Made by a program: the position numbers and the translations under genes | Notes under the pieces: model-generated | What the model was told of the DNA's origin: nothing | The model's database searches: none | What the model saw: only the letters and a program-made list of their open reading frames with translations | Origin: Octopus sinensis | Lineage: Eukaryota | Assembly (NCBI RefSeq): GCF_006345805.1 | Contig: NC_042998.1 | Coordinates: 53,630,001 to 53,694,000 of the forward strand | Direction of reading: 5' to 3' | Length of the DNA stretch: 64,000 bases | In this document: piece after piece, positions 19,934 to 52,736 of the stretch | How positions within the stretch are numbered: position 1 is the first letter of the stretch | Layout of the letters: each line of letters begins with the position of its first letter

Positions 19934-20911
19934 ATATTCTTCAACATATGAACTCATATAAAGAATCTTGCAAACCAAATCTAAAAACGAAACATCTATC
20001 CTATTATGTTTATATTTGACATGTTTTTGATGGGAATATTCCACCAGTATTCCTTGTGTTGATGCTTGTGTATATTTATACAAATACAGGGGGATTCTCA
20101 ATATTCATTCCAGTATAATCTTTTTTCTGAATGGTATTGTATATTGTTCAAGGTACTGCTTTATGCATATTGTTTATTTGATGCAGATATTGTATATTAT
20201 TCATTGAATATTGTTCAAGGTGAGACATTGTGTCACATATGGAGGCAGCATCTTGATGGCATTTTTGGACAGTTGTAAATTGCATGTGTGATGTCTTCCA
20301 CAGAACTATGACATAATCTACAATTTTGGTTGCATCTTGGAGTTCCACAGGCGTCAGTCTCTTTTGTTTATTAATGTTTTGTAGCAATTTCCTGTTCTTG
20401 GATTGCAAATGTATAGTCTTTGAAGTGTGATATGATGTAGCTGTCACTAGCACCAGGGATGCTATGCTTCATCTCAATATTACTGTATTCTTTTTTTATA
20501 TATGTATCTATCTGTCTATATCTATGTGTGTATATGTGTGTGACAAACTCTCACTCTCTCTCTCCCTCTGTATATATATATATATATATAGCTATGTATA
20601 CATATACATATACACACACATATATGTATATATATACATGTATAAGTACATACATACACACACACTAACAAAGTTGCTATAATCATGACTGGAATGCCTC
20701 TGATCACATACTTGTTTAATGAGAGTTGACTCTGTGACCACAACAACAACAACAAAACAGGCTTCTTTTATGGAATAAATTTGCATAAATCTATTTTTGT
20801 TTGCCATATTTTCTTTCAACTCTTTTTAAAATATTTCCTACTGGCGGGAAGAAATTACAAATGATATTGTGAAATATGATTCAACTCCAATAATTCATCA
20901 TTTATATTTTT

Positions 20912-20942
<31 letters not shown>

Positions 20943-21650
20943 TCATAAATGAGGGCAAAGGAAAAAAATTTTAATGCCAAATATGCCGAAAAATTGGACA
21001 TATTGTCCATTAACCATGTAATTTTTTCACAATACCCACGCTACTCGAAAAAAGGTCGACAGAAATTTCTAAAAAATTCCATTATTACTCATTTATGAAT
21101 TGTTTATAAATTTAACCATTAAAGGTATTTTTTAATATGCTGGCCATTGATAAAATTTTTTTCGAGAAAATATTTTTTTTTTTTCGAAAAGAATTTTATC
21201 CTCACATTTTATCAGGTTAGTTTACCATTAAACAGTAGACGAAACGGTGCATCGTATAAGGAATTTCAGGGTAAATGTTTTTTTAATTTTCTCCTGGTTT
21301 ACAGAATTAATGTTATTTTGCGGTTGAAGCTTTTTGGCTGTTATTTCTAGTGGGTGAATGGTCTATTATGGCCGTTCCTTGATTGTGATATTGAACTTAA
21401 AAATGGTTTATGACTATTTAATTTTTTCCCACTAGGCCGCTGGGGGCAAAAGAATTCTACAAAATTTTTTTGCCTCCCTATATTGATTAATTATGAATTT
21501 TCTGGTTAGTTCCGTAATGGAATCGGCGGCTTATATTTATTTGCTGCCGATAAATTTGGCGCTTTTGCGACGATTTGAAAATTTTAGGTCAGATATTGGC
21601 GAGGCATGGACGTGAATGCCTCGTGAAAAATATCTGTTCCGATTTGGCTA

Positions 21651-21755
21651 TTCCTTACTGATGAATCTAAGGGCCTATGGTAGATTGGCTTGATTTAATT
21701 TAATCAGATTAGTTTACCATTAAACAGTAGACGAAACGGTGCATCGTATAAGGAA
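21651..21755 (+). ncRNA. Type I hammerhead ribozyme motif, copy 1
   Basis: Stem I ttcctta/taaggaa; CTGATGA 21658-21664; stem II atcta/tagac (A.C at 10.1-11.1) with 58-nt loop; GAAA 21733; stem III acggtgcatcgt; GUA triplet, predicted cut after 21748. Confidence 0.85.
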
Positions 21756-22142
21756 TTTCAGGGTAAATGTTTTTTTAATTTTCTCCTGGTTTACAGAATT
21801 AATGTTATTTTGCGGCTGAAGCTTTTTGGCTGTTATTTCTAGTAGGTGAATGGCCTATTATGGCCGTTCCTTGATTGTGATATTGAACTTAAAAATGGTT
21901 TATGACTATTTAATTTTTTCCCACTAGGCCGCTGGGGGCAAAAGAATTCTACAAAATTTTTTTGCCTCCCTATATTGATTAATTATGAATTTTCTGGTTA
22001 GTTCCGTAATGGAATCGGCGGCTTATATTTATTTGCTGCCGATAAATTTGGCGCTTTTGCGACGATTTGAAAATTTTAGGTCAGATATTGGCGAGGCATG
22101 GACGTGAATGCCTCGTGAAAAATATCTGTTCCGATTTGGCTA

Positions 22143-22247
22143 TTCCTTACTGATGAATCTAAGGGCCTATGGTAGATTGGCTTGATTTAATTTAATCAGA
22201 TTAGTTTACCATTAAACAGTAGACGAAACGGTGCATCGTATAAGGAA
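22143..22247 (+). ncRNA. Type I hammerhead ribozyme motif, copy 2
   Basis: Same elements; predicted cut after 22240. Confidence 0.85.
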
Positions 22248-22632
22248 TTTCAGGGTAAATGTTTTTTTAATTTTCTCCTGGTTACAGAATTAATGTTATT
22301 TTGCGGCTGAAGCTTTTTGGCTGTTATTTCTAGTAGGTGAATGGCCTATTATGGCCGTTCCTTGATTGTGATATTGAACTTAAAAATGGTTTATGACTAT
22401 TAATTTTTTCCCACTAGGCCGCTGGGGGCAAAAGAATTCTACAAAATTTTTTTGCCTCCCTATATTGATTAATTATGAATTTTCTGGTTAGTTCCGTAAT
22501 GGAATCGGCGGCTTATATTTATTTGCTGCCGATAAATTTGGCGCGAGTGCGACGATTTGAAAATTTTAGGTCAGATATTGGCGAGGCATGGACGTGAATG
22601 CCTCGTGAAAAATATCTGTTCCGATTTGGCTA

Positions 22633-22737
22633 TTCCTTACTGATGAATCTAAGGGCCTATGGTAGATTGGCTTGATTTAATTTAATCAGGTTAGTTTACC
22701 ATTAAACAGTAGACGAAACGGTGCATCGTATAAGGAA
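22633..22737 (+). ncRNA. Type I hammerhead ribozyme motif, copy 3
   Basis: Same elements; predicted cut after 22730. Confidence 0.85.
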
Positions 22738-23124
22738 TTTCAGGGTAAATGTTTTTTTAATTTTCTCCTGGTTTACAGAATTAATGTTATTTTGCGGTTG
22801 AAGCTTTTTGGCTGTTATTTCTAGTGGGTGAATGGCCTATTATGGCCGTTCCTTGATTGTGATATTGAACTTAAAAATGGTTTATGACTATTTAATTTTT
22901 TCCCACTAGGCCGCTGGGGGCAAAAGAATTCTACAAAATTTTTTTGCCTCCCTATATTGATTAATTATGAATTTTCTGGTTAGTTCCGTAATGGAATCGG
23001 CGGCTTATATTTATTTGCTGCCGATAAATTTGGCGCTTTTGCGACGATTTGAAAATTTTAGGTCAGATATTGGCGAGGCATGGACGTGAATGCCTCGTGA
23101 AAAATATCTGTTCCGATTTGGCTA

Positions 23125-23229
23125 TTCCTTACTGATGAATCTAAGGGCCTATGGTAGATTGGCTTGATTTAATCTAATCAGGTTAGTTTACCATTAAACA
23201 GTAGACGAAACGGTGCATCGTATAAGGAA
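23125..23229 (+). ncRNA. Type I hammerhead ribozyme motif, copy 4
   Basis: Same elements; predicted cut after 23222. Confidence 0.85.
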
Positions 23230-23615
23230 CTTCAGGGTAAATGTTTTTTTAATTTTCTCCTGGTTTACAGAATTAATGTTATTTTGCGGTTGAAGCTTTT
23301 TGGCTGTTATTTCTAGTGGGTGAATGGCCTATTATGGCCGTTCCTTGATTGTGATATTGAACTTAAAAATGGTTTATGACTATTTAATTTTTTCCCACTA
23401 GGCCGCTGGGGGCAAAAGAATTCTACAAAATTTTTTTGCCTCCCTATATGATTAATTATGAATTTTCTGGTTAGTTCCGTAATGGAATCGGCGGCTTATA
23501 TTTATTTGCTGCCGATAAATTTGGCGCGAGTGCGACGATTTGAAAATTTTAGGTCAGATATTGGCGAGGCATGGACGTGAATGCCTCGTGAAAAATATCT
23601 GTTCCGATTTGGCTA

Positions 23616-23720
23616 TTCCTTACTGATGAATCTAAGGGCCTATGGTAGATTGGCTTGATTTAATTTAATCAGGTTAGTTTACCATTATACAGTAGACGAA
23701 ACGGTGCATCGTATAAGGAA
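23616..23720 (+). ncRNA. Type I hammerhead ribozyme motif, copy 5
   Basis: Same elements; predicted cut after 23713. Confidence 0.85.
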
Positions 23721-24105
23721 TTTTAGGGTAAATGTTTTTTTAATTTTCTCCTGGTTTACAGAATTAATGTTATTTTGCGGTTGAAGCTTTTTGGCTGTTA
23801 TTTCTAGTGGGTGAATGGCCTATTATGGCCGTTCCTTGATTGTGATATTGAACTTAAAAATGGTTTATGACTATTAATTTTTTCCCACTAGGCCGCTGGG
23901 GGCAAAAGAATTCTACAAAATTTTTTTGCCTCCCTATATTGATTAATTATGAATTTTCTGGTTAGTTCCGTAATGGAATCGGCGGCTTATATTTATTGCT
24001 GCCGATAAATTTGGCGCGAGTGCGACGATTTGAAAATTTTAGGTCAGATATTGGCGAGGCATGGACGTGAATGCCTCGTGAAAAATATCTGTTCCGATTT
24101 GGCTA

Positions 24106-24210
24106 TTCCTTACTGATGAATCTAAGGGCCTATGGTAGATTGGCTTGATTTAATCTAATCAGGTTAGTTTACCATTAAACAGTAGACGAAACGGTGCATC
24201 GTATAAGGAA
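24106..24210 (+). ncRNA. Type I hammerhead ribozyme motif, copy 6
   Basis: Same elements; predicted cut after 24203. Confidence 0.85.
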
Positions 24211-24744
24211 TTTCAGGGTAAATGTTTTTTTAATTTTCTCCTGGTTTACAGAATTAATGTTATTTTGCGGTTGAAGCTTTTTGGCTGTTATTTCTAGTGG
24301 GTGAATGGCCTATTATGGCCGTTCCTTGATTGTGATATATATATATACATATGTTCTTCCTTTTGGTACATTCTGTTGTTGGTTATTGTGTGACTTCAGT
24401 AAGGTTTTCAAGAGTAGCTCTGTTGATTAAAAGTGGTTGATGAAATACTTTGAAAAAAAAAACAGAAATCAATTGATTCAATATCATAAATAGACCCATG
24501 CCATTGTCTGGCATGTTGGTTTCATTTGAAACGCAACATCTAATTAACATTTCATCAATAGGTTATACTATCTTTATTGTAGTTAAGGCTGCTGTTCTGA
24601 AAATTTAGGACATAAAATGTGTAATACCTATTTCTTTGCTACCCACAAGGGGCTAAACACAGAGAGGACAAACAAGGACAAATATCTCTTCTCAAACAAA
24701 ATGGGAAACATCCTTTCCCTCCTCGCTTCTCAGAAGTGTTACCC

Positions 24745-29542: not shown

Positions 29543-30468
29543 ATCTGGAAATATGGAATGCTTCACAAATTTGTGTCATCCTTGCACAGAGGCCATTCTA
29601 ATCTTCCCTGTATTATTCCAATTTTAGATTACGTACAACCAAAGCTAATATACACAGGATTTTATCTAATGTAACTAAATATTTCATTAGAGATGAAAAA
29701 TAAGGGGTTTACCATAATTTATAAAGGCCTTTTAAGAACAGAGGTTTTAGTTGTAGGAATATAATTTGGTTGACTGGGTGTAAATAGTCAGAAGAGTGAT
29801 AGGATAAGAGTAAAACAAGTTGGGTTAAGAGGGAGTTTAACAGGTTTGAGTTCAATGTATAGAGTGCAAAGACATTGAGAGGTTTGTTCATTAGAGCAGG
29901 ATTTAAAACGATTACATATTGTGTTTAACTTATTTATTAACATTGCTTTGAATTAATCAATTATTATCTCATAGTTTCAAAATTTCAATGATGTGCAGGA
30001 TCAGGCCAGTTTGAATATAAAGCTAGTAGAATATTTATGATGGATATGGCTGGTTTAAATGCTAAAGGGTTAAGTAAGTCCCTGGACTTACTTTTGCTTC
30101 CAGTCTCAAGACTCACAGGGCCACTTACCCAGTTTCCATGGTGTGCAAGCAACCAAGATCACAACATCTTCCCTGAACAGGATGTCGGTCTCTTGCAGGG
30201 TTATTTATTTACAGCTGAGTGGAACGAGACAATATGAAACGAAATATTTTGTTCAAGACAGAAAGAGGACAAAATACCTTATCTTTCTGCTGTTTTCACA
30301 GCTATACTGCATTTATAATTTACTATCTTGTCTGTAAAATACCAAACACATTCGATTTTTCCAAATTTTGATTACAAAATGTTGTCGCTTTCCTAAAGCT
30401 ATTATTTAGTGTTCAAATTGACATAATTGGTGTTAGCAGACACTGTAGCTTAATGGTAGAGTACTAAG

Positions 30469-44560: not shown

Positions 44561-45377
44561 TTCTGGTTGGAACCCCTATGTTGCCTATTCTAGAATTACC
44601 TGGTTAAGAGTTCATATGGTTACAGGAACACTACAGAACACCATGTTATGGTATGTATGTTACAGTGGTGAGGTTGAGAACACAAAGGTGCATAAACCAT
44701 CCCCACATGTTGCCTATTCTAGAATTACCTCTGGTTGGAACCCCTATGTTGCCTATTCTAGAATTACCTGGTTAAGAGTTCATATGGTTACAGGAACACT
44801 ACAGAACACCATGTTATGGTATGTATGTTACAGTGGTGAGGTTGAGAACACAAAGGTGCATAAACCATCCCCACATGTTGCCTATTCTAGAATTACCTCT
44901 GGTTGGAACCCCTATGTTGCCTATTCTAGAATTACCTGGTTAAGAGTTCATATGGTTACAGGAACACTACAGAACACCATGTTATGGTATGTATGTTACA
45001 GTGGTGGGTTGAGAACACAAAGGTGCATAAACCATCCCCACATGTTGCCTATTCTAGAATTACCTCTGGTTGGAACCCCTATGTTGCCTATTCTAGAATT
45101 ACCTGGTTAAGAGTTCATATGGTTACAGGAACACTACAGAACACCATGTTATGGTATGTATGTTACAGTGGTGAGGTTGAGAACACAAAGGTGCATAACC
45201 ATCCCCACATGTTGCCTATTCTAGAATTACCTCTGGTTGGAACCCCTATGTTGCCTATTCTAGAATTACCTGGTTAAGAGTTCATATGGTTACAGGAACA
45301 CTACAGAACACCATGTTATGGTATGTATGTTACAGTGGTGAGGTTGAGAACACAAAGGTGCATAAACCATCCCCACA
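44561..45377. repeat. 168-bp tandem satellite, ~4.9 near-identical copies
   Basis: ctggttggaacccc at 44563, 44731, 44899, 45066 and 45233; each unit contains atgttgcctattctagaattacct twice. Confidence 0.97.
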
Positions 45378-50402: not shown

Positions 50403-52560
50403 TCAGGCCATATCCCGTGGCCCCTACCTGGGACGTAGTCGATCCACCTGTGCATACCTTCCTTCTTGTGACACTTGTGAAGACCTGCTGAGGCAAGTGA
50501 AAATCAATCAAAATAGATGAACATCAATGGAATTTGTATCTTTGTGGTACCAGTGCCTGCGGCACACAAGAAAACCATCCGAACGTGGCCGTAGCCAGTA
50601 CCGCATCGACTGGCCTCCGTGCTGTGGGAACATGGTGGCACATAAAAACACCATCCGAAGACCCGGCAAGACTAGTCAGGTCATATCCCGTGGGCCCTAC
50701 CTGGGACGTAGTCAGTCCACCTGTACATACCTTCCTTCTTGTGACACTTGTGAAGACCTGCTGAGGCAAGGGAAAATCAAAATCAAATCAAAACAAATCA
50801 AATAGATGAACATCAATGGAATTGTATCTTGTGGTACCAGTGCCGGTGGCACACAAGAATCCATCCGAACGTGGCCGTAGTCAGTACCGCTTGTGGTACC
50901 AGTGCCGGTGGCACACAAGAATCCATCCGAACGTGGCCGTAGTCAGTACCGCTTGTGGTACCAGTGCCGGTGGCACACAAGAATCCATCCGAACGTGGCC
51001 GTAGTCAGTACCGCATCACTCGCCATCGTGCTGTGGGCACATAACAAACACCATCCGGTCGTGGCCGTTCGCCAGCCTCATCTAGCACCTGTGTCGGTGG
51101 CACATAAAAAGTAGTCAGTACCGCTTGTGGTACCAGTGCCGGTGGCACACAAGAATCCATCCGAACATGGCCGTAGTCAGTACCGCATCACTGGCCATCG
51201 TGCTGTGGGCACATAACAAACACCATCCGGTCGTGGCCGTTCGCCAGCTCATCTAGCACCTGTGTCGGTGGCACATAAAAACACCTTCCGAAGACCCGGC
51301 AAGACTAGTCAGGCCATAAACCATGGCCCCTACCTGGGACGTAGTCAGTCCACTGTGCATACCTTCCTCCTTGTGATACTTGTGAAGGCCTGTTGAGGCA
51401 AGTGAAAATCAAAATCAAAATCAAATCAAAACAAATCAAATAGATGAACATCAATGGAATTTGTATCTTTGTGGTACCAGTGCCGGTGGCACACAAGAGA
51501 AAACCATCCGAAAGTGGCCGTAGCCAGTACCGCATCGACTGGCCTCCGTGCTGTGGGCACATGACAAACACCATCCGATCGTGGCCGTTCGCCAGCCTCA
51601 TCTAGCACCTGTGTCGGTGGCACATAAAAACACCATCCGAAGACCCGGCAAGACTAGTCAGGCCATAACCCATGGCCCCTACCTGGGACGTAGTCAGTCC
51701 ACCTGTGCATACCTTCCTTCTTGTGACACTTGTGAAGACCTGTTGAGGCAAGTGAAAATCAAAATCAAAACAAATCAAATAGATGAACATCAATGGAATT
51801 TGTATCTTTGTGGTACCAGTGCCGGTGGCACACAAGAGAAAACCATCCGAAAGTGGCCGTAGCCAGTACCGCATCGACTGGCCTCCGTGCTGTGGGCACA
51901 TGACAAACACCATCGATCGTGGCCGTTCGCCAGCCTCATCTAGCACCTGTGTCGGTGGCACATAAAAACACCATCCGAAGACCCGGCAAGACTAGTCAGG
52001 CCATAACCCATGGCCCCTACCTGGGACGTAGTCAGTCCACCTGTGCATACCTTCCTTCTTGTGTGACACTTGTGAAGACCTGTTGAGGCAAGTGAAAATC
52101 AAATCAAAACAAATCAAATAGATGAACATCAATGGAATCTGTATCTTTGTGGTACCAGTGCCGGTGGCACGTGGCACATAGAAAACCATCCGAACGTGGC
52201 CGTAGCCAGTACCGCATCGACTGGCCTCCGTGCTGTGGGCACGTAACAAGCACCATCCGATCGTGGCCGTTTGCCAGCCTCATCTGGCACCTGTGTCGGT
52301 GGCACATAAAAACACCATCCGAGCGTGGCCGTCTGCCAGCCTCGTCTGGCACCTGTGTCGGTGGCACATAAAAACACCATCCGAGCGTGGCCGTCTGCCA
52401 GCCTCGTCTGGCACCTGTGTCGGTGACACATAAAAAAAAACACCATCCGAGCGTGGCCGTCTGCCAGCCTCGTCTGGCACCTGTGTCGGTGGCACATAAA
52501 AACACCATCCGAGCGTGGCCGTTTGCCAGCCTCGTCTGGCACTTGTGTCGGTGGCACATA
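50403..52560 (+). repeat. Hierarchical tandem array within the RTE 3' UTR
   Basis: gaagacccggcaagactagtcagg recurs at 50657, 51290, 51639 and 51977; nested ~64-bp (50826-51010) and ~61-bp (52255-52560) subrepeats. Confidence 0.92.
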
Positions 52561-52736
52561 AAATCACCCACTACACTCTCGGAGTGGTTGGCGTTAGGAA
52601 GGGCATCCAGCTGTAGAAACACTGCCAGATCTGACTGGACTGGTGCAGCTTTCGGGCTCCCCAGACCCCAGTTGAACCGTCCAACCCATGCTAGCATGGA
52701 AAGCGGACGTTAAATGATGATGATGATGATGATGAT
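52561..52736 (+). mobile_element. RTE-type 3' terminus with (GAT)n tail
   Basis: ggttggcgttaggaagggcatccagc...gcggacgttaaatgatgatgatg. Confidence 0.88.

What the first reader, a model, noticed from the sequence alone, without database searches (positions are those of the whole stretch)
21211..24338. Hammerhead-ribozyme satellite (non-LTR retrozyme-like) with ~491-nt structured monomers
Seen: ~6.4 near-identical head-to-tail units. Six complete type I hammerheads recur at unit spacing (ttcctta CTGATGA atcta..58 nt..tagac GAAA cggtgcatcg TA taaggaa) with an invariant core. Predicted cuts after 21748, 22240, 22730, 23222, 23713 and 24203 would give 490-492-nt monomers. The rest of the unit has several helices: 21442-21478 (~15 bp), 21522-21551 (9 bp), 21590-21636 (8+8 bp). 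Established: tandem type I hammerhead repeats occur as newt satellite 2, schistosome Sm-alpha, cricket pDo500 and metazoan non-LTR retrozymes, which yield circular RNAs and are proposed to be mobilised by Penelope-like elements. Inference: this is a young, possibly active, self-processing circRNA retroelement. I am not aware of one described in cephalopods, but cannot verify that without a search.
Basis: partly seen in the sequence, partly recalled or inferred. Interest (0 to 1): 0.93.

Follow-up and report, generated by a model that had tools for sequence, protein, structure and literature searches.

The report
Octopus-type hammerhead retrozyme array, Penelope-style insertion
This 3.1-kb stretch is one insertion of a young, non-coding 490-base mobile repeat whose every unit carries a hammerhead self-cutting RNA motif, and whose genomic copies bear the scars of Penelope-like retrotransposon enzymes; it is a new family of a known class (animal "retrozymes"), with cutting and RNA circles still untested.

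Summary
Window 21206-24338 is a 6.4-unit head-to-tail array (period 492, 98% matches). It has six complete type I hammerhead (HHR) motifs and one 3' half; the predicted cuts give 490-492-nt units.

Rfam's hammerhead models miss it. The likely reasons are a ~68-nt helix II arm and an A.C mismatch at positions 10.1/11.1. The fold is nevertheless supported genome-wide:
- About 2,650 copies match, against 0 for a reversed control pattern.
- The only varying core position is N7, and H17 is A or C, never G.
- Two-sided changes keep helix I paired (C-G 385, U-A 1,966, unpaired 7) and helix II paired.

The family is a retroelement, not a satellite. In 31 loci:
- 27 are head-to-head twin arms inside (TA)n.
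- The outer ends are fixed at unit positions 135 and 238, always one of each (24 of 24 complete twins).
- The inner ends are variable and joined by 0-6 nt of microhomology.
- Both arms share one haplotype.

This matches the Penelope-like-element signature: two internal reverse-transcription start sites (the "tail"), both target strands extended, and AT-rich targets. The window copy is a single arm ending at site 135.

Self-cleavage, circular RNA and expression remain unshown. Earlier agents of this scan reached the same reading for this family on other DNA of this genome. Verdict: new member of a known kind.

The parts
21206..24338 (+). One insertion of the retrozyme family: a single-arm array of 6.4 units. 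It runs from a 5'-truncated unit (unit positions 442-492), through six full units, to a final partial unit (positions 1-135).
   Evidence: TRF; BLAST of the unit against the window; unit boundaries.
21651..21755 (+). Hammerhead motif 1. Layout: helix I 5' strand UUCCUUA, core CUGAUGA, helix II (A.C, then UCUA/UAGA plus a 12+6 bp arm), GAAA, helix III segment CGGUGCAUCG, U-A, cut, helix I 3' strand UAAGGAA. Predicted cut after 21748.
   Evidence: Sequence; the MFE fold recovers helices I and II; pattern match.
22143..22247 (+). Hammerhead motif 2, predicted cut after 22240.
22633..22737 (+). Hammerhead motif 3, predicted cut after 22730.
23125..23229 (+). Hammerhead motif 4, predicted cut after 23222.
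23616..23720 (+). Hammerhead motif 5, predicted cut after 23713.
24106..24210 (+). Hammerhead motif 6, predicted cut after 24203.
21206..21263 (+). Partial hammerhead: only the 3' half survives at the 5'-truncated start of the array. Nominal cut after 21256.
24326..24338 (+). 3' terminus of the insertion (..UUGAUUGUGAUAU), unit position 135. This is the family's primary fixed end, read as the first reverse-transcription start site.
   Evidence: The same end is seen in 28 of 31 loci.
21483..21494 (+). First internal copy of the second fixed end (..UUGAUUAAUUAU), unit position 238. It recurs in every unit. In twin-arm loci the other arm ends here; it is not used as an end in this locus.
24339..24353 (.). 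Remnant of the (TA)n target microsatellite at the 3' junction.
   Evidence: Sequence; flank analysis.
20903..20940 (.). (TA)19, probably the other half of the target microsatellite. An unrelated 265-bp repeat separates it from the array.
   Evidence: TRF; sequence.

Best explanation
The array is one insertion of a non-autonomous, non-coding retroelement of the animal 'non-LTR retrozyme' kind. Its unit is about 490 nt and strongly structured.

Each unit carries one plus-strand type I hammerhead with:
- a 7-bp helix I;
- an unusually long helix II arm;
- a very weak helix III, whose 10-nt segment is self-complementary, so two neighbouring motifs can pair into a double hammerhead.

Proposed cycle:
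1. Arrays are transcribed into multimers (inferred).
2. Hammerheads acting in pairs cut after GUA/GUC into 490-nt monomers (inferred from motif, covariation and energies).
3. A host RNA ligase may circularise the monomers (inferred from work on other retrozymes).
4. A Penelope-like-element RT-endonuclease cuts both strands of a (TA)n microsatellite. It starts reverse transcription at two fixed internal sites of the RNA, 135 and 238 nt after the hammerhead cut, one on each DNA end.
5. It copies several unit lengths. The two cDNAs are joined head to head by microhomology.

The scars are shown; the enzyme is inferred. The window copy is the simpler outcome: only the site-135 arm, 6.4 units, 5'-truncated. 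It later underwent some exchange between its own units.
For: Motif
- All core nucleotides are in the right order and the three helices have type I topology.
- Full-motif pattern: 2,653 genome hits against 0 for the reversed control. 3'-half pattern: 2,686 against 0.
- In 181 copies of the window's subfamily, core positions show only singletons. H17 is A in 161 and C in 19, never G.
- Across subfamilies N7 is U, A or C, the one free core position.
- Helix I pair 397/5: C-G 385, U-A 1,966, C.A 4, U.G 3.
- Helix II pair 413/472 is A-U or G-C in all 100 listed copies. Pair 414/471 goes from A.G to U-A in another subfamily.
- The same paired changes sit in one 521-nt contig of a different organism label.
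- Helix III as a hairpin scores -0.2 to -1.2 kcal/mol; as a self-duplex it scores -17.5 to -19.5.

Non-coding
- The longest open frame across tandem units is 47 codons.

Retrotransposition
- 27 of 31 loci are '-' arm then '+' arm; none is the reverse order.
- All 24 complete twins have one end at 135 and the other at 238.
- All 4 single arms end at 135.
- Flanks are (TA)n in 26-27 of 31 loci.
- Inner junctions are variable, with 0-6 nt overlap or short filler.
- On chromosome 1, 16 of 36 loci of all subfamilies are -/+ and 0 are +/-.
- All units of both arms share one haplotype, with at least 8 haplotypes between loci.
- Median substitution divergence within a locus is 0.2%.

Precedent
- A purified PLE cuts and extends both strands, prefers AT-rich DNA, and starts RT at two adjacent internal RNA sites; the sequence between those sites is the genomic 'tail' (PMC11167929).
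- PLE copies typically have an inverted 5'-truncated copy and a tail at one end only (PMC8557442).
- The genome holds GIY-YIG reading frames of up to 781-883 codons without stops, in many equal-scoring copies.
Against: - No Rfam hammerhead model reports the motif, even at E<=10.
- The usually conserved G10.1-C11.1 pair is absent. It is A-U in the major subfamilies, A.C (131 of 181) or A.A (50 of 181) in the window's subfamily, and U.U in another. The ribozyme in this array may therefore be weak or dead.
- The MFE of the isolated motif prefers an alternative pairing of UGAUG with CAUCG by about 3 kcal/mol.
- No cleavage ends, circles or proven transcripts were seen. All runs were contigs, RNA status was mostly guessed, and some contigs carry (TA)n junctions typical of DNA.
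- In the one PLE tested in vitro, hammerhead cleavage was not needed for insertion and unprocessed RNA was the main template (PMC11167929). Proliferation therefore does not prove ribozyme activity or a circular template.
- The covariation rests on a few subfamily splits, that is, few independent events.
- The autonomous partner was not identified. No PLE frame lies within 5 kb of the listed chromosome 1 loci.
Confidence: 0.8

Rival explanations
1. Same element and same PLE-type insertion, but the template is a long linear multimeric transcript rather than a circle. Under this reading the hammerhead is dispensable for mobility: a passenger inherited from a PLE terminal repeat, or a part that acts at another step.
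For: - In vitro, hammerhead-dead mutants of a PLE RNA insert equally well, unprocessed RNA is the main substrate, and no reads end at the hammerhead site in vivo (PMC11167929).
- The window's subfamily spread to about 385 intact motifs despite an A.C or A.A mismatch at the helix II base.
- Homogeneous source arrays would also yield homogeneous daughter arrays.
Against: - Arms reach 13 units or more, which would need uncleaved transcripts over 6 kb.
- The helices and the allowed cut-site nucleotide have been kept through subfamily turnover, with almost no unpaired intermediates: 7 of 2,358. This argues for selection on the fold.
- The strict one-135, one-238 rule is most simply explained if both DNA ends use a template holding one copy of each site.
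Confidence: 0.35
2. The hammerhead in this particular array and subfamily is an inactive relic. The family's ribozyme works only in subfamilies that have an A-U pair at 10.1/11.1.
For: - 10.1/11.1 is A.C or A.A in all 181 copies of this subfamily, while the major subfamilies have A-U.
- The Rfam consensus has G-C at this pair.
Against: - An axolotl retrozyme hammerhead with a U.U mismatch at the base of helix II still self-cleaves, better as a dimer (PMC7229834).
- PLE-type hammerheads commonly have an unpaired base at the 5' end of helix II (PMC4209133).
- This subfamily includes the youngest insertions, with 0.1% within-locus divergence.
Confidence: 0.3
3. An ordinary satellite or minisatellite, amplified and dispersed by DNA-level processes such as unequal exchange or extrachromosomal circles, whose hammerhead-like motif is a chance resemblance.
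For: - It is a tandem array.
- Rfam gives no match.
- This array shows exchange between its units: a private TTT variant is interleaved among them.
Against: - The reversed-pattern control gives 0 hits against about 2,650.
- Two-sided compensatory changes occur in two helices.
- The arrays show fixed 3' ends, variable 5' truncation, (TA)n targets, an exclusive -/+ orientation and one haplotype per insertion. These are retrotransposition scars, not satellite dynamics.
Confidence: 0.03
4. The repeat is merely the terminal repeat (pLTR) or untranslated part of an autonomous Penelope-like element, not a stand-alone element.
For: - PLE terminal repeats carry hammerheads and form partial tandems (PMC4209133, PMC8557442).
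- Earlier notes of this scan report Hydra-clade PLEs in this genome with long-stem-II hammerheads (not tested here).
Against: - In all 31 loci the arrays consist only of about 490-nt units bounded directly by (TA)n.
- There is no open frame over 47 codons.
- No GIY-YIG frame lies within 5 kb of the listed loci.
Confidence: 0.05

Closest known systems
Metazoan non-LTR retrozymes (coral, mussel, axolotl; Cervera & de la Pena 2020, PMC7229834)
   Same: - Head-to-tail non-coding units with low GC (36% here).
- One type I hammerhead per unit.
- Weak helix III with a palindromic segment, implying dimeric action.
- Dispersed short arrays.
- A proposed link to Penelope-like elements.
   Different: - The unit is about 490 nt, against the reported 170-400 nt.
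- Helix II is a ~68-nt arm instead of about 4 bp with a loop, so the classical loop1-loop2 contacts are not evident.
- 10.1/11.1 is A-U or A.C, not G-C.
- Expression, circles and cleavage are shown for those elements but not here.
Penelope-like elements and their insertion signature (Poseidon PAc in vitro, PMC11167929; genomic structures, PMC8557442)
   Same: - Partial tandems.
- An inverted 5'-truncated copy placed head to head.
- Two internal RT start sites, visible as a 'tail' at one end only.
- Both target strands are used.
- AT-rich or (TA)n targets.
- The hammerhead lies roughly 100 nt upstream of the RT start.
   Different: - There is no RT-endonuclease frame, so the element is non-autonomous.
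- The tail is 103 nt, against 30-40 bp.
- The start sites end in AU-rich sequence resembling the (TA)n target, whereas the PAc starts are not homologous to the target.
- The two sites are used strictly one per arm, whereas no strand difference was seen in vitro.
Newt satellite 2, Schistosoma Sm-alpha and PLE 'min-HHR' hammerheads (PMC4209133)
   Same: - Type I motif in tandem repeats.
- Minimal or palindromic helix III that requires two motifs.
- A larger helix II and irregularity at its 5' base in the PLE variants.
   Different: Helix III here has 3 potential pairs plus a 10-nt self-complementary segment. Helix II is far longer than the 7-8 bp of the min-HHRs.
Plant LTR retrozymes (PMC4918200)
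   Same: Non-autonomous, hammerhead-bounded RNA, proposed to move through circular RNA.
   Different: Plant retrozymes have LTRs, a primer-binding site and a polypurine tract, type III hammerheads and high GC, and depend on Ty3/Gypsy. None of these applies here.

Membership tests
Hammerhead ribozyme, type I | Conserved core C3-U4-G5-A6-N7-G8-A9 ... G12-A13-A14 ... U16.1-H17, in that order | tested here: met
   Present in all six units. In 181 copies core positions show only singletons, and H17 is A or C, never G. Across subfamilies only N7 varies.
Hammerhead ribozyme, type I | Three helices around the core, with helix I open, kept by covariation | tested here: met
   The MFE fold recovers helices I and II. 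Helix I pair 397/5: C-G 385, U-A 1,966, unpaired 7. Helix II 413/472 is A-U or G-C in 100 of 100 listed copies, and 414/471 goes from A.G to U-A. These are few independent events.
Hammerhead ribozyme, type I | G10.1-C11.1 pair at the base of helix II | tested here: not met
   A.C or A.A in the window's subfamily. A-U, A.C or U.U in others, and G at 10.1 in one contig. Natural retrozyme and PLE hammerheads with a mismatch or bulge here are on record.
Hammerhead ribozyme, type I | Score above threshold with Rfam RF00163 or clan models | tested here: not met
   No hammerhead hit at the gathering score or at E<=10. The same model does find short-helix-II hammerheads elsewhere in this genome. The ~68-nt helix II insert is the likely cause.
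Hammerhead ribozyme, type I | Site-specific self-cleavage | not testable with these tools
   Needs in vitro transcription or raw RNA read ends. Only contigs were available.
Metazoan non-LTR retrozyme | Short tandem non-coding units, each with a type I hammerhead; no LTR, PBS or PPT; low GC | tested here: met
   GC 36%; longest open frame 47 codons. At about 490 nt the unit exceeds the published 170-400 nt range (PMC7229834).
Metazoan non-LTR retrozyme | Dispersed copies produced by retrotransposition | tested here: met
   At least 2,650 units on many chromosomes. Fixed 3' ends, 5' truncation, (TA)n targets and one haplotype per insertion.
Metazoan non-LTR retrozyme | Expressed as linear and circular monomer RNAs | tested here: inconclusive
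   Contigs of runs guessed to be RNA cover the unit and its wrap-around joint. DNA would give the same result. One 208-nt contig comes from a true polyA metatranscriptome.
PLE-mobilised element (Penelope-like insertion signature) | Partial tandem plus an inverted 5'-truncated copy, head to head | tested here: met
   27 of 31 loci are -/+ and 0 are +/-. On chromosome 1 the ratio across subfamilies is 16:0.
PLE-mobilised element (Penelope-like insertion signature) | Two internal RT start sites, seen as a 'tail' at one end only | tested here: met
   Ends lie at 135 and 238, one of each in 24 of 24 complete twins. Single arms end at 135. Compare PMC11167929 and PMC8557442.
PLE-mobilised element (Penelope-like insertion signature) | AT-rich or microsatellite target | tested here: met
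   (TA)n flanks in 26-27 of 31 loci.
PLE-mobilised element (Penelope-like insertion signature) | A matching autonomous PLE in the same genome that shares terminal sequence | tested here: inconclusive
   GIY-YIG frames of up to 883 codons without stops exist.

The most novel reading that the evidence does not exclude
Each twin-arm insertion is made from a single monomeric circular RNA by a dimeric PLE enzyme. One protomer starts at site 135 on one cut DNA end, and the other starts at site 238 on the other end. Both then run round the same circle (twin-primed rolling-circle reverse transcription).

This would explain three observations at once: the strict one-of-each rule, the identical haplotype of both arms, and the multi-unit arms. 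If so, the genomic scars of this family are direct in vivo evidence for circular templates and for the division of labour between the two RT start sites seen in vitro.
Probability: 0.3. Interest if true: 0.7.

Novelty: new member of a known kind. Interest (0 to 1): 0.5.

Why it matters
Retrozymes and their dependence on Penelope-like elements are known mainly from corals, mussels and amphibians, and how they insert is still inferred.

This family is useful for three reasons:
- It is young and abundant: at least 2,650 units, and many insertions differ by only 0.1%.
- Its insertion scars are unusually clean: exact ends at two sites, always one per arm, in (TA)n, with one haplotype per event.
- It has natural subfamilies that differ at the helix II base (A-U, A.C, A.A, U.U).

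Together these make it a ready-made system for two open questions. Is hammerhead cutting needed for mobility? Is the template a circle or a multimer?

For genome annotation, such arrays should be called as retroelement insertions rather than satellites.

Tried and rejected
- Rfam scans of the window, at the gathering score and at E<=10, found no hammerhead. I do not take this as evidence against the motif, because the model expects a 4-bp helix II.
- Covariation inside the window's own subfamily (181 copies) is uninformative. The copies are too alike, and the shared variants in the helix II arm are mostly transitions in G.U-rich stems that would fit by chance.
- Expression and circularity could not be settled. 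Both run searches returned only Logan contigs. The single read-laying run showed coverage and a 'goes back 492' joint, which tandem DNA also gives. It showed no read ends, and some contigs carry (TA)n junctions.
- The autonomous partner was not found. I did not try another tool to get round this.
- ORFs next to the canonical Rfam hammerheads (L031-L036) gave no RT or endonuclease domain. The only hit was a weak zf-RVT.
- A minus-strand hammerhead, as in viroid-like agents, is absent.
- A protein-coding reading is rejected: the longest open frame is 47 codons.
- Literature searches for octopus or cephalopod hammerheads and retrozymes, and for an octopus satellite of this kind, found nothing specific.
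- The host taxon was not verified by me. The earlier notes call it an octopus genome.
- A majority-rule sequence of the 492-nt unit was made in a script solely to fold it. It is not proposed for any reconstruction.
Full report
**1. The observation**

Tandem Repeats Finder reports one array at 21206-24338 with period 492, 6.4 copies and 98% matches. The string CATCGTA|TAAGGAA recurs with predicted cuts after 21256, 21748, 22240, 22730, 23222, 23713 and 24203. This gives units of 492, 492, 490, 492, 491 and 490 nt that are 98.0-99.4% identical.

The pattern CTGATGA-N(40-70)-GAAAC is found 7 times in the window against 0.34 expected. Six of the seven are in the array. The array starts with a 5'-truncated unit (unit positions 442-492, counting from the first base after the cut) and ends at unit position 135.

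GC content is 36%, like the window as a whole. No reading frame longer than 47 codons runs through tandem units on either strand. Only the plus strand has a hammerhead core.

**2. The motif**

Read 5' to 3', the motif is:
- UUCCUUA (helix I);
- CUGAUGA (core);
- A, then UCUA, then a long arm, then UAGA, then C (helix II);
- GAAA (core);
- CGGUGCAUCG (helix III segment);
- U-A, the cut, then UAAGGAA (helix I).

An unconstrained fold of a 131-nt piece recovers helix I, the UCUA/UAGA stem and a 12+6 bp distal arm. The whole unit folds at -145 kcal/mol with z = -5.8. As a circle the family majority sequence folds at -150 kcal/mol, is 62% paired and has z = -6.8.

Helix III is marginal as a hairpin (-0.2 to -1.2 kcal/mol) but forms a 12-bp self-duplex of -17.5 to -19.5 kcal/mol. 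This is the double-hammerhead design described for newt, PLE and retrozyme motifs (PMC4209133; PMC7229834).

Three points count against the motif:
- No Rfam hammerhead model reports it, even at E<=10.
- The pair next to the core (10.1/11.1) is A.C here instead of G-C.
- The isolated motif has a competing pairing, UGAUG with CAUCG, that is about 3 kcal/mol better.

**3. Is the fold real?**

The window's own subfamily is too uniform to tell. In 181 copies the core shows only singletons, like most other positions. The shared polymorphisms are 11.1 (C 131, A 50) and H17 (A 161, C 19, never G).

The genome as a whole is informative. A degenerate full-motif pattern has 2,653 hits and a 3'-half pattern has 2,686. 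Each has 0 hits for the reversed control. The listed copies fall into subfamilies that differ as follows:
- N7 is U, A or C. This is the one free core position.
- 10.1/11.1 is A-U in the major subfamilies, A.C or A.A in the window's, and U.U in another.
- Helix II pair 413/472 is either A-U or G-C in all 100 listed copies.
- Pair 414/471 changes from A.G to U-A in a further subfamily.
- For helix I pair 397/5 I counted all four combinations: C-G 385, U-A 1,966, C.A 4, U.G 3.

A 521-nt contig from a different organism label, about 91% identical, carries C397U with G5A, A413G with U472C, 11.1 = U and N7 = A together.

These are few independent events. They are two-sided, they preserve pairing, and unpaired intermediates have not propagated. 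I take the hammerhead fold as real for the family (about 0.85). I take its activity in the window's A.C subfamily as open (about 0.5). An axolotl retrozyme hammerhead with a U.U mismatch at the same place still cleaves.

**4. What the arrays are**

The unit has at least 302 near-identical hits on many chromosomes of the 2.72-Gb assembly. I fetched 31 loci and mapped units, flanks and junctions. The results:
- 27 loci consist of a minus-strand arm followed by a plus-strand arm, that is, head to head. None has the reverse order.
- On chromosome 1, over all subfamilies, the ratio is 16 to 0.
- Outer ends are fixed at unit position 135 (..UUGAUUGUGAUAU|) or 238 (..UUGAUUAAUUAU|).
- In all 24 twins not cut by a locus end or a deletion, one arm ends at 135 and the other at 238 (14 in one order, 10 in the other). 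No twin has two like ends.
- The 4 single-arm loci, this window among them, all end at 135.
- Flanks are (TA)n on both sides in 26-27 of 31 loci.
- Inner ends fall anywhere in the unit. They are joined with 0-6 nt of overlap or 5-13 nt of filler.
- All units of both arms share the same subfamily haplotype, while at least 8 haplotypes occur between loci.
- Median substitution divergence within a locus is 0.2% (0.3% between arms) against 1.0% between loci. Several loci are at about 0.1%.

Each array is therefore one recent retrotransposition event, copied from one template sequence. It is not a satellite that grew in place.

**5. Mechanism and precedent**

The scars match what is known for Penelope-like elements. 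Their genomic copies are partial tandems with an inverted 5'-truncated copy and a 30-40-bp 'tail' at one end only, and some clades prefer (TA)n (PMC8557442).

A purified Poseidon PLE showed the following in vitro (PMC11167929):
- It cuts and extends both DNA strands.
- It prefers AT-rich DNA.
- It is predicted to be a dimer.
- It starts reverse transcription at two adjacent internal RNA sites. The interval between them equals the tail.
- Its hammerhead cut site lies 26 nt into the ORF and the RT start 111-118 nt into it, so the cut is about 85-92 nt upstream of the RT start.

Here the two starts lie 135 and 238 nt after the cut, so the 'tail' is 103 nt. Both start sites lie in regions that are unpaired or weakly paired in the circular fold.

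The genome contains many GIY-YIG reading frames of equal score, some in open frames of 781-883 codons without stops. A young PLE is therefore plausibly present.

The same in vitro study found hammerhead cleavage unnecessary for insertion and unprocessed RNA to be the main template. Spread of the family therefore does not prove ribozyme activity or a circular intermediate. The strict one-135, one-238 rule and the shared haplotype of both arms fit a single monomeric circle used by both DNA ends. A protein dimer that positions two sites of one linear RNA would fit as well.

**6. This locus**

The window copy is a single plus-strand arm of 6.4 units. Its 3' end is at site 135 and abuts a (TA)n remnant (24339-24353). 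Its 5' end (unit position 442) abuts an unrelated 265-bp repeat (20941-21205), which in turn abuts (TA)19 (20903-20940).

That repeat has at least 86 copies in the genome. Its first 148 bp are bounded by a 14-nt inverted repeat. I could not decide whether it arrived by template switching during the same event or by a separate insertion.

The array is among the older ones, with 1.1% within-array divergence. It carries a private TTT variant of a hairpin loop (unit positions 307-309) in units 1, 2 and 4 but not in 3, 5 and 6. This indicates exchange between units after insertion.

**7. Expression**

Two run searches returned only assembled contigs. Several organism labels hold the unit. Contigs of four runs cover it, including a joint that 'goes back 492'. 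Tandem DNA gives the same picture, and some contigs end in (TA)n junctions. Only one 208-nt contig comes from a run on record as RNA: a polyA metatranscriptome labelled feces. Expression, cleavage ends and circles are therefore not shown.

**8. Comparison and novelty**

The element works like, and meets the tested defining features of, the metazoan non-LTR retrozymes (PMC7229834; bioRxiv 10.64898/2026.07.22.740005). It differs in four ways:
- a larger unit (about 490 nt, against 170-400);
- a very long helix II arm;
- no G-C pair at 10.1/11.1;
- a 103-nt tail.

I found no paper describing such an element in cephalopods in the library searched. Earlier agents of this scan reached the same reading for the same 491-bp family on other pieces of this genome. 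They also reported Hydra-clade PLEs with long-stem-II hammerheads in (TA)n. I saw these notes after my own analysis. The family-level claims I tested agree with them. The PLE-partner lead is untested.

Verdict: a new member of a known kind. It has moderate interest as an unusually clean natural record of PLE-type twin priming.

Noticed in passing
window 29547-29653 (-): A U6 spliceosomal snRNA gene or pseudogene, full length, 77.7 bits (gathering score 44). It lies about 5 kb downstream of the array.
   Followed up: no
window 20941-21205: An unrelated 265-bp repeat sits between (TA)19 and the 5' end of the array, with at least 86 genomic copies. Its first 148 bp are bounded by a 14-nt inverted repeat (AATTCATAAATGAG). 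In most other loci that segment is inverted relative to the last 117 bp. It may be a MITE-like or invertible element, or a template-switch passenger of the same insertion.
   Followed up: partly
window 21149-21200: A 22-nt-arm hairpin (91% complementary) inside that 265-bp repeat. It gives a weak mir-3747-like hit (26.5 bits, far below the gathering score of 63, E = 0.025), which is probably chance.
   Followed up: no
window 44562-45377; 50828-52568: Other young tandem arrays: 167-nt units x 4.9 (99% matches), and a nested 62/172/339-nt GC-richer array (88-100% matches). Neither was examined for ribozyme motifs.
   Followed up: no
L031-L037 (e.g. G000:C16:25146363 and 25146794): The genome also holds canonical short-helix-II type I hammerheads that pass Rfam RF00163 (CUGAAGAG-ACCC..GGGU-CGAAAC-AUGU-GUC, with a palindromic helix III). 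Two are 431 nt apart, in a 431-nt tandem unit that itself includes (TC)n(TA)n.
   Followed up: partly
L033:2011-2125 (+): A 5S rRNA-like sequence (46 bits, above the gathering score) lies about 460 nt downstream of a canonical hammerhead (L033:1501-1548). It may be a 5S-derived mobile element next to a hammerhead module.
   Followed up: no
run X17, window 21532-21739: A polyA metatranscriptome labelled 'feces metagenome' holds a 208-nt contig 96% identical to the unit. This may be dietary octopus RNA or DNA in a predator's gut.
   Followed up: no
L041 flanks (G000:C9:104040000-104047500): One twin insertion is not in pure (TA)n. The 14-nt string TATTGAAATAAATA occurs about 49 nt before the left junction and again directly after the right junction. 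This may be a long target-site duplication with AT-rich filler.
   Followed up: no
G000, GIY-YIG hits (e.g. C6:12733272, C10:27570372): Dozens of GIY-YIG matches share an identical score and sit in open frames of up to 781-883 codons without stops. This looks like a very young, possibly intact Penelope-like family, and is a candidate driver of the retrozyme.
   Followed up: partly
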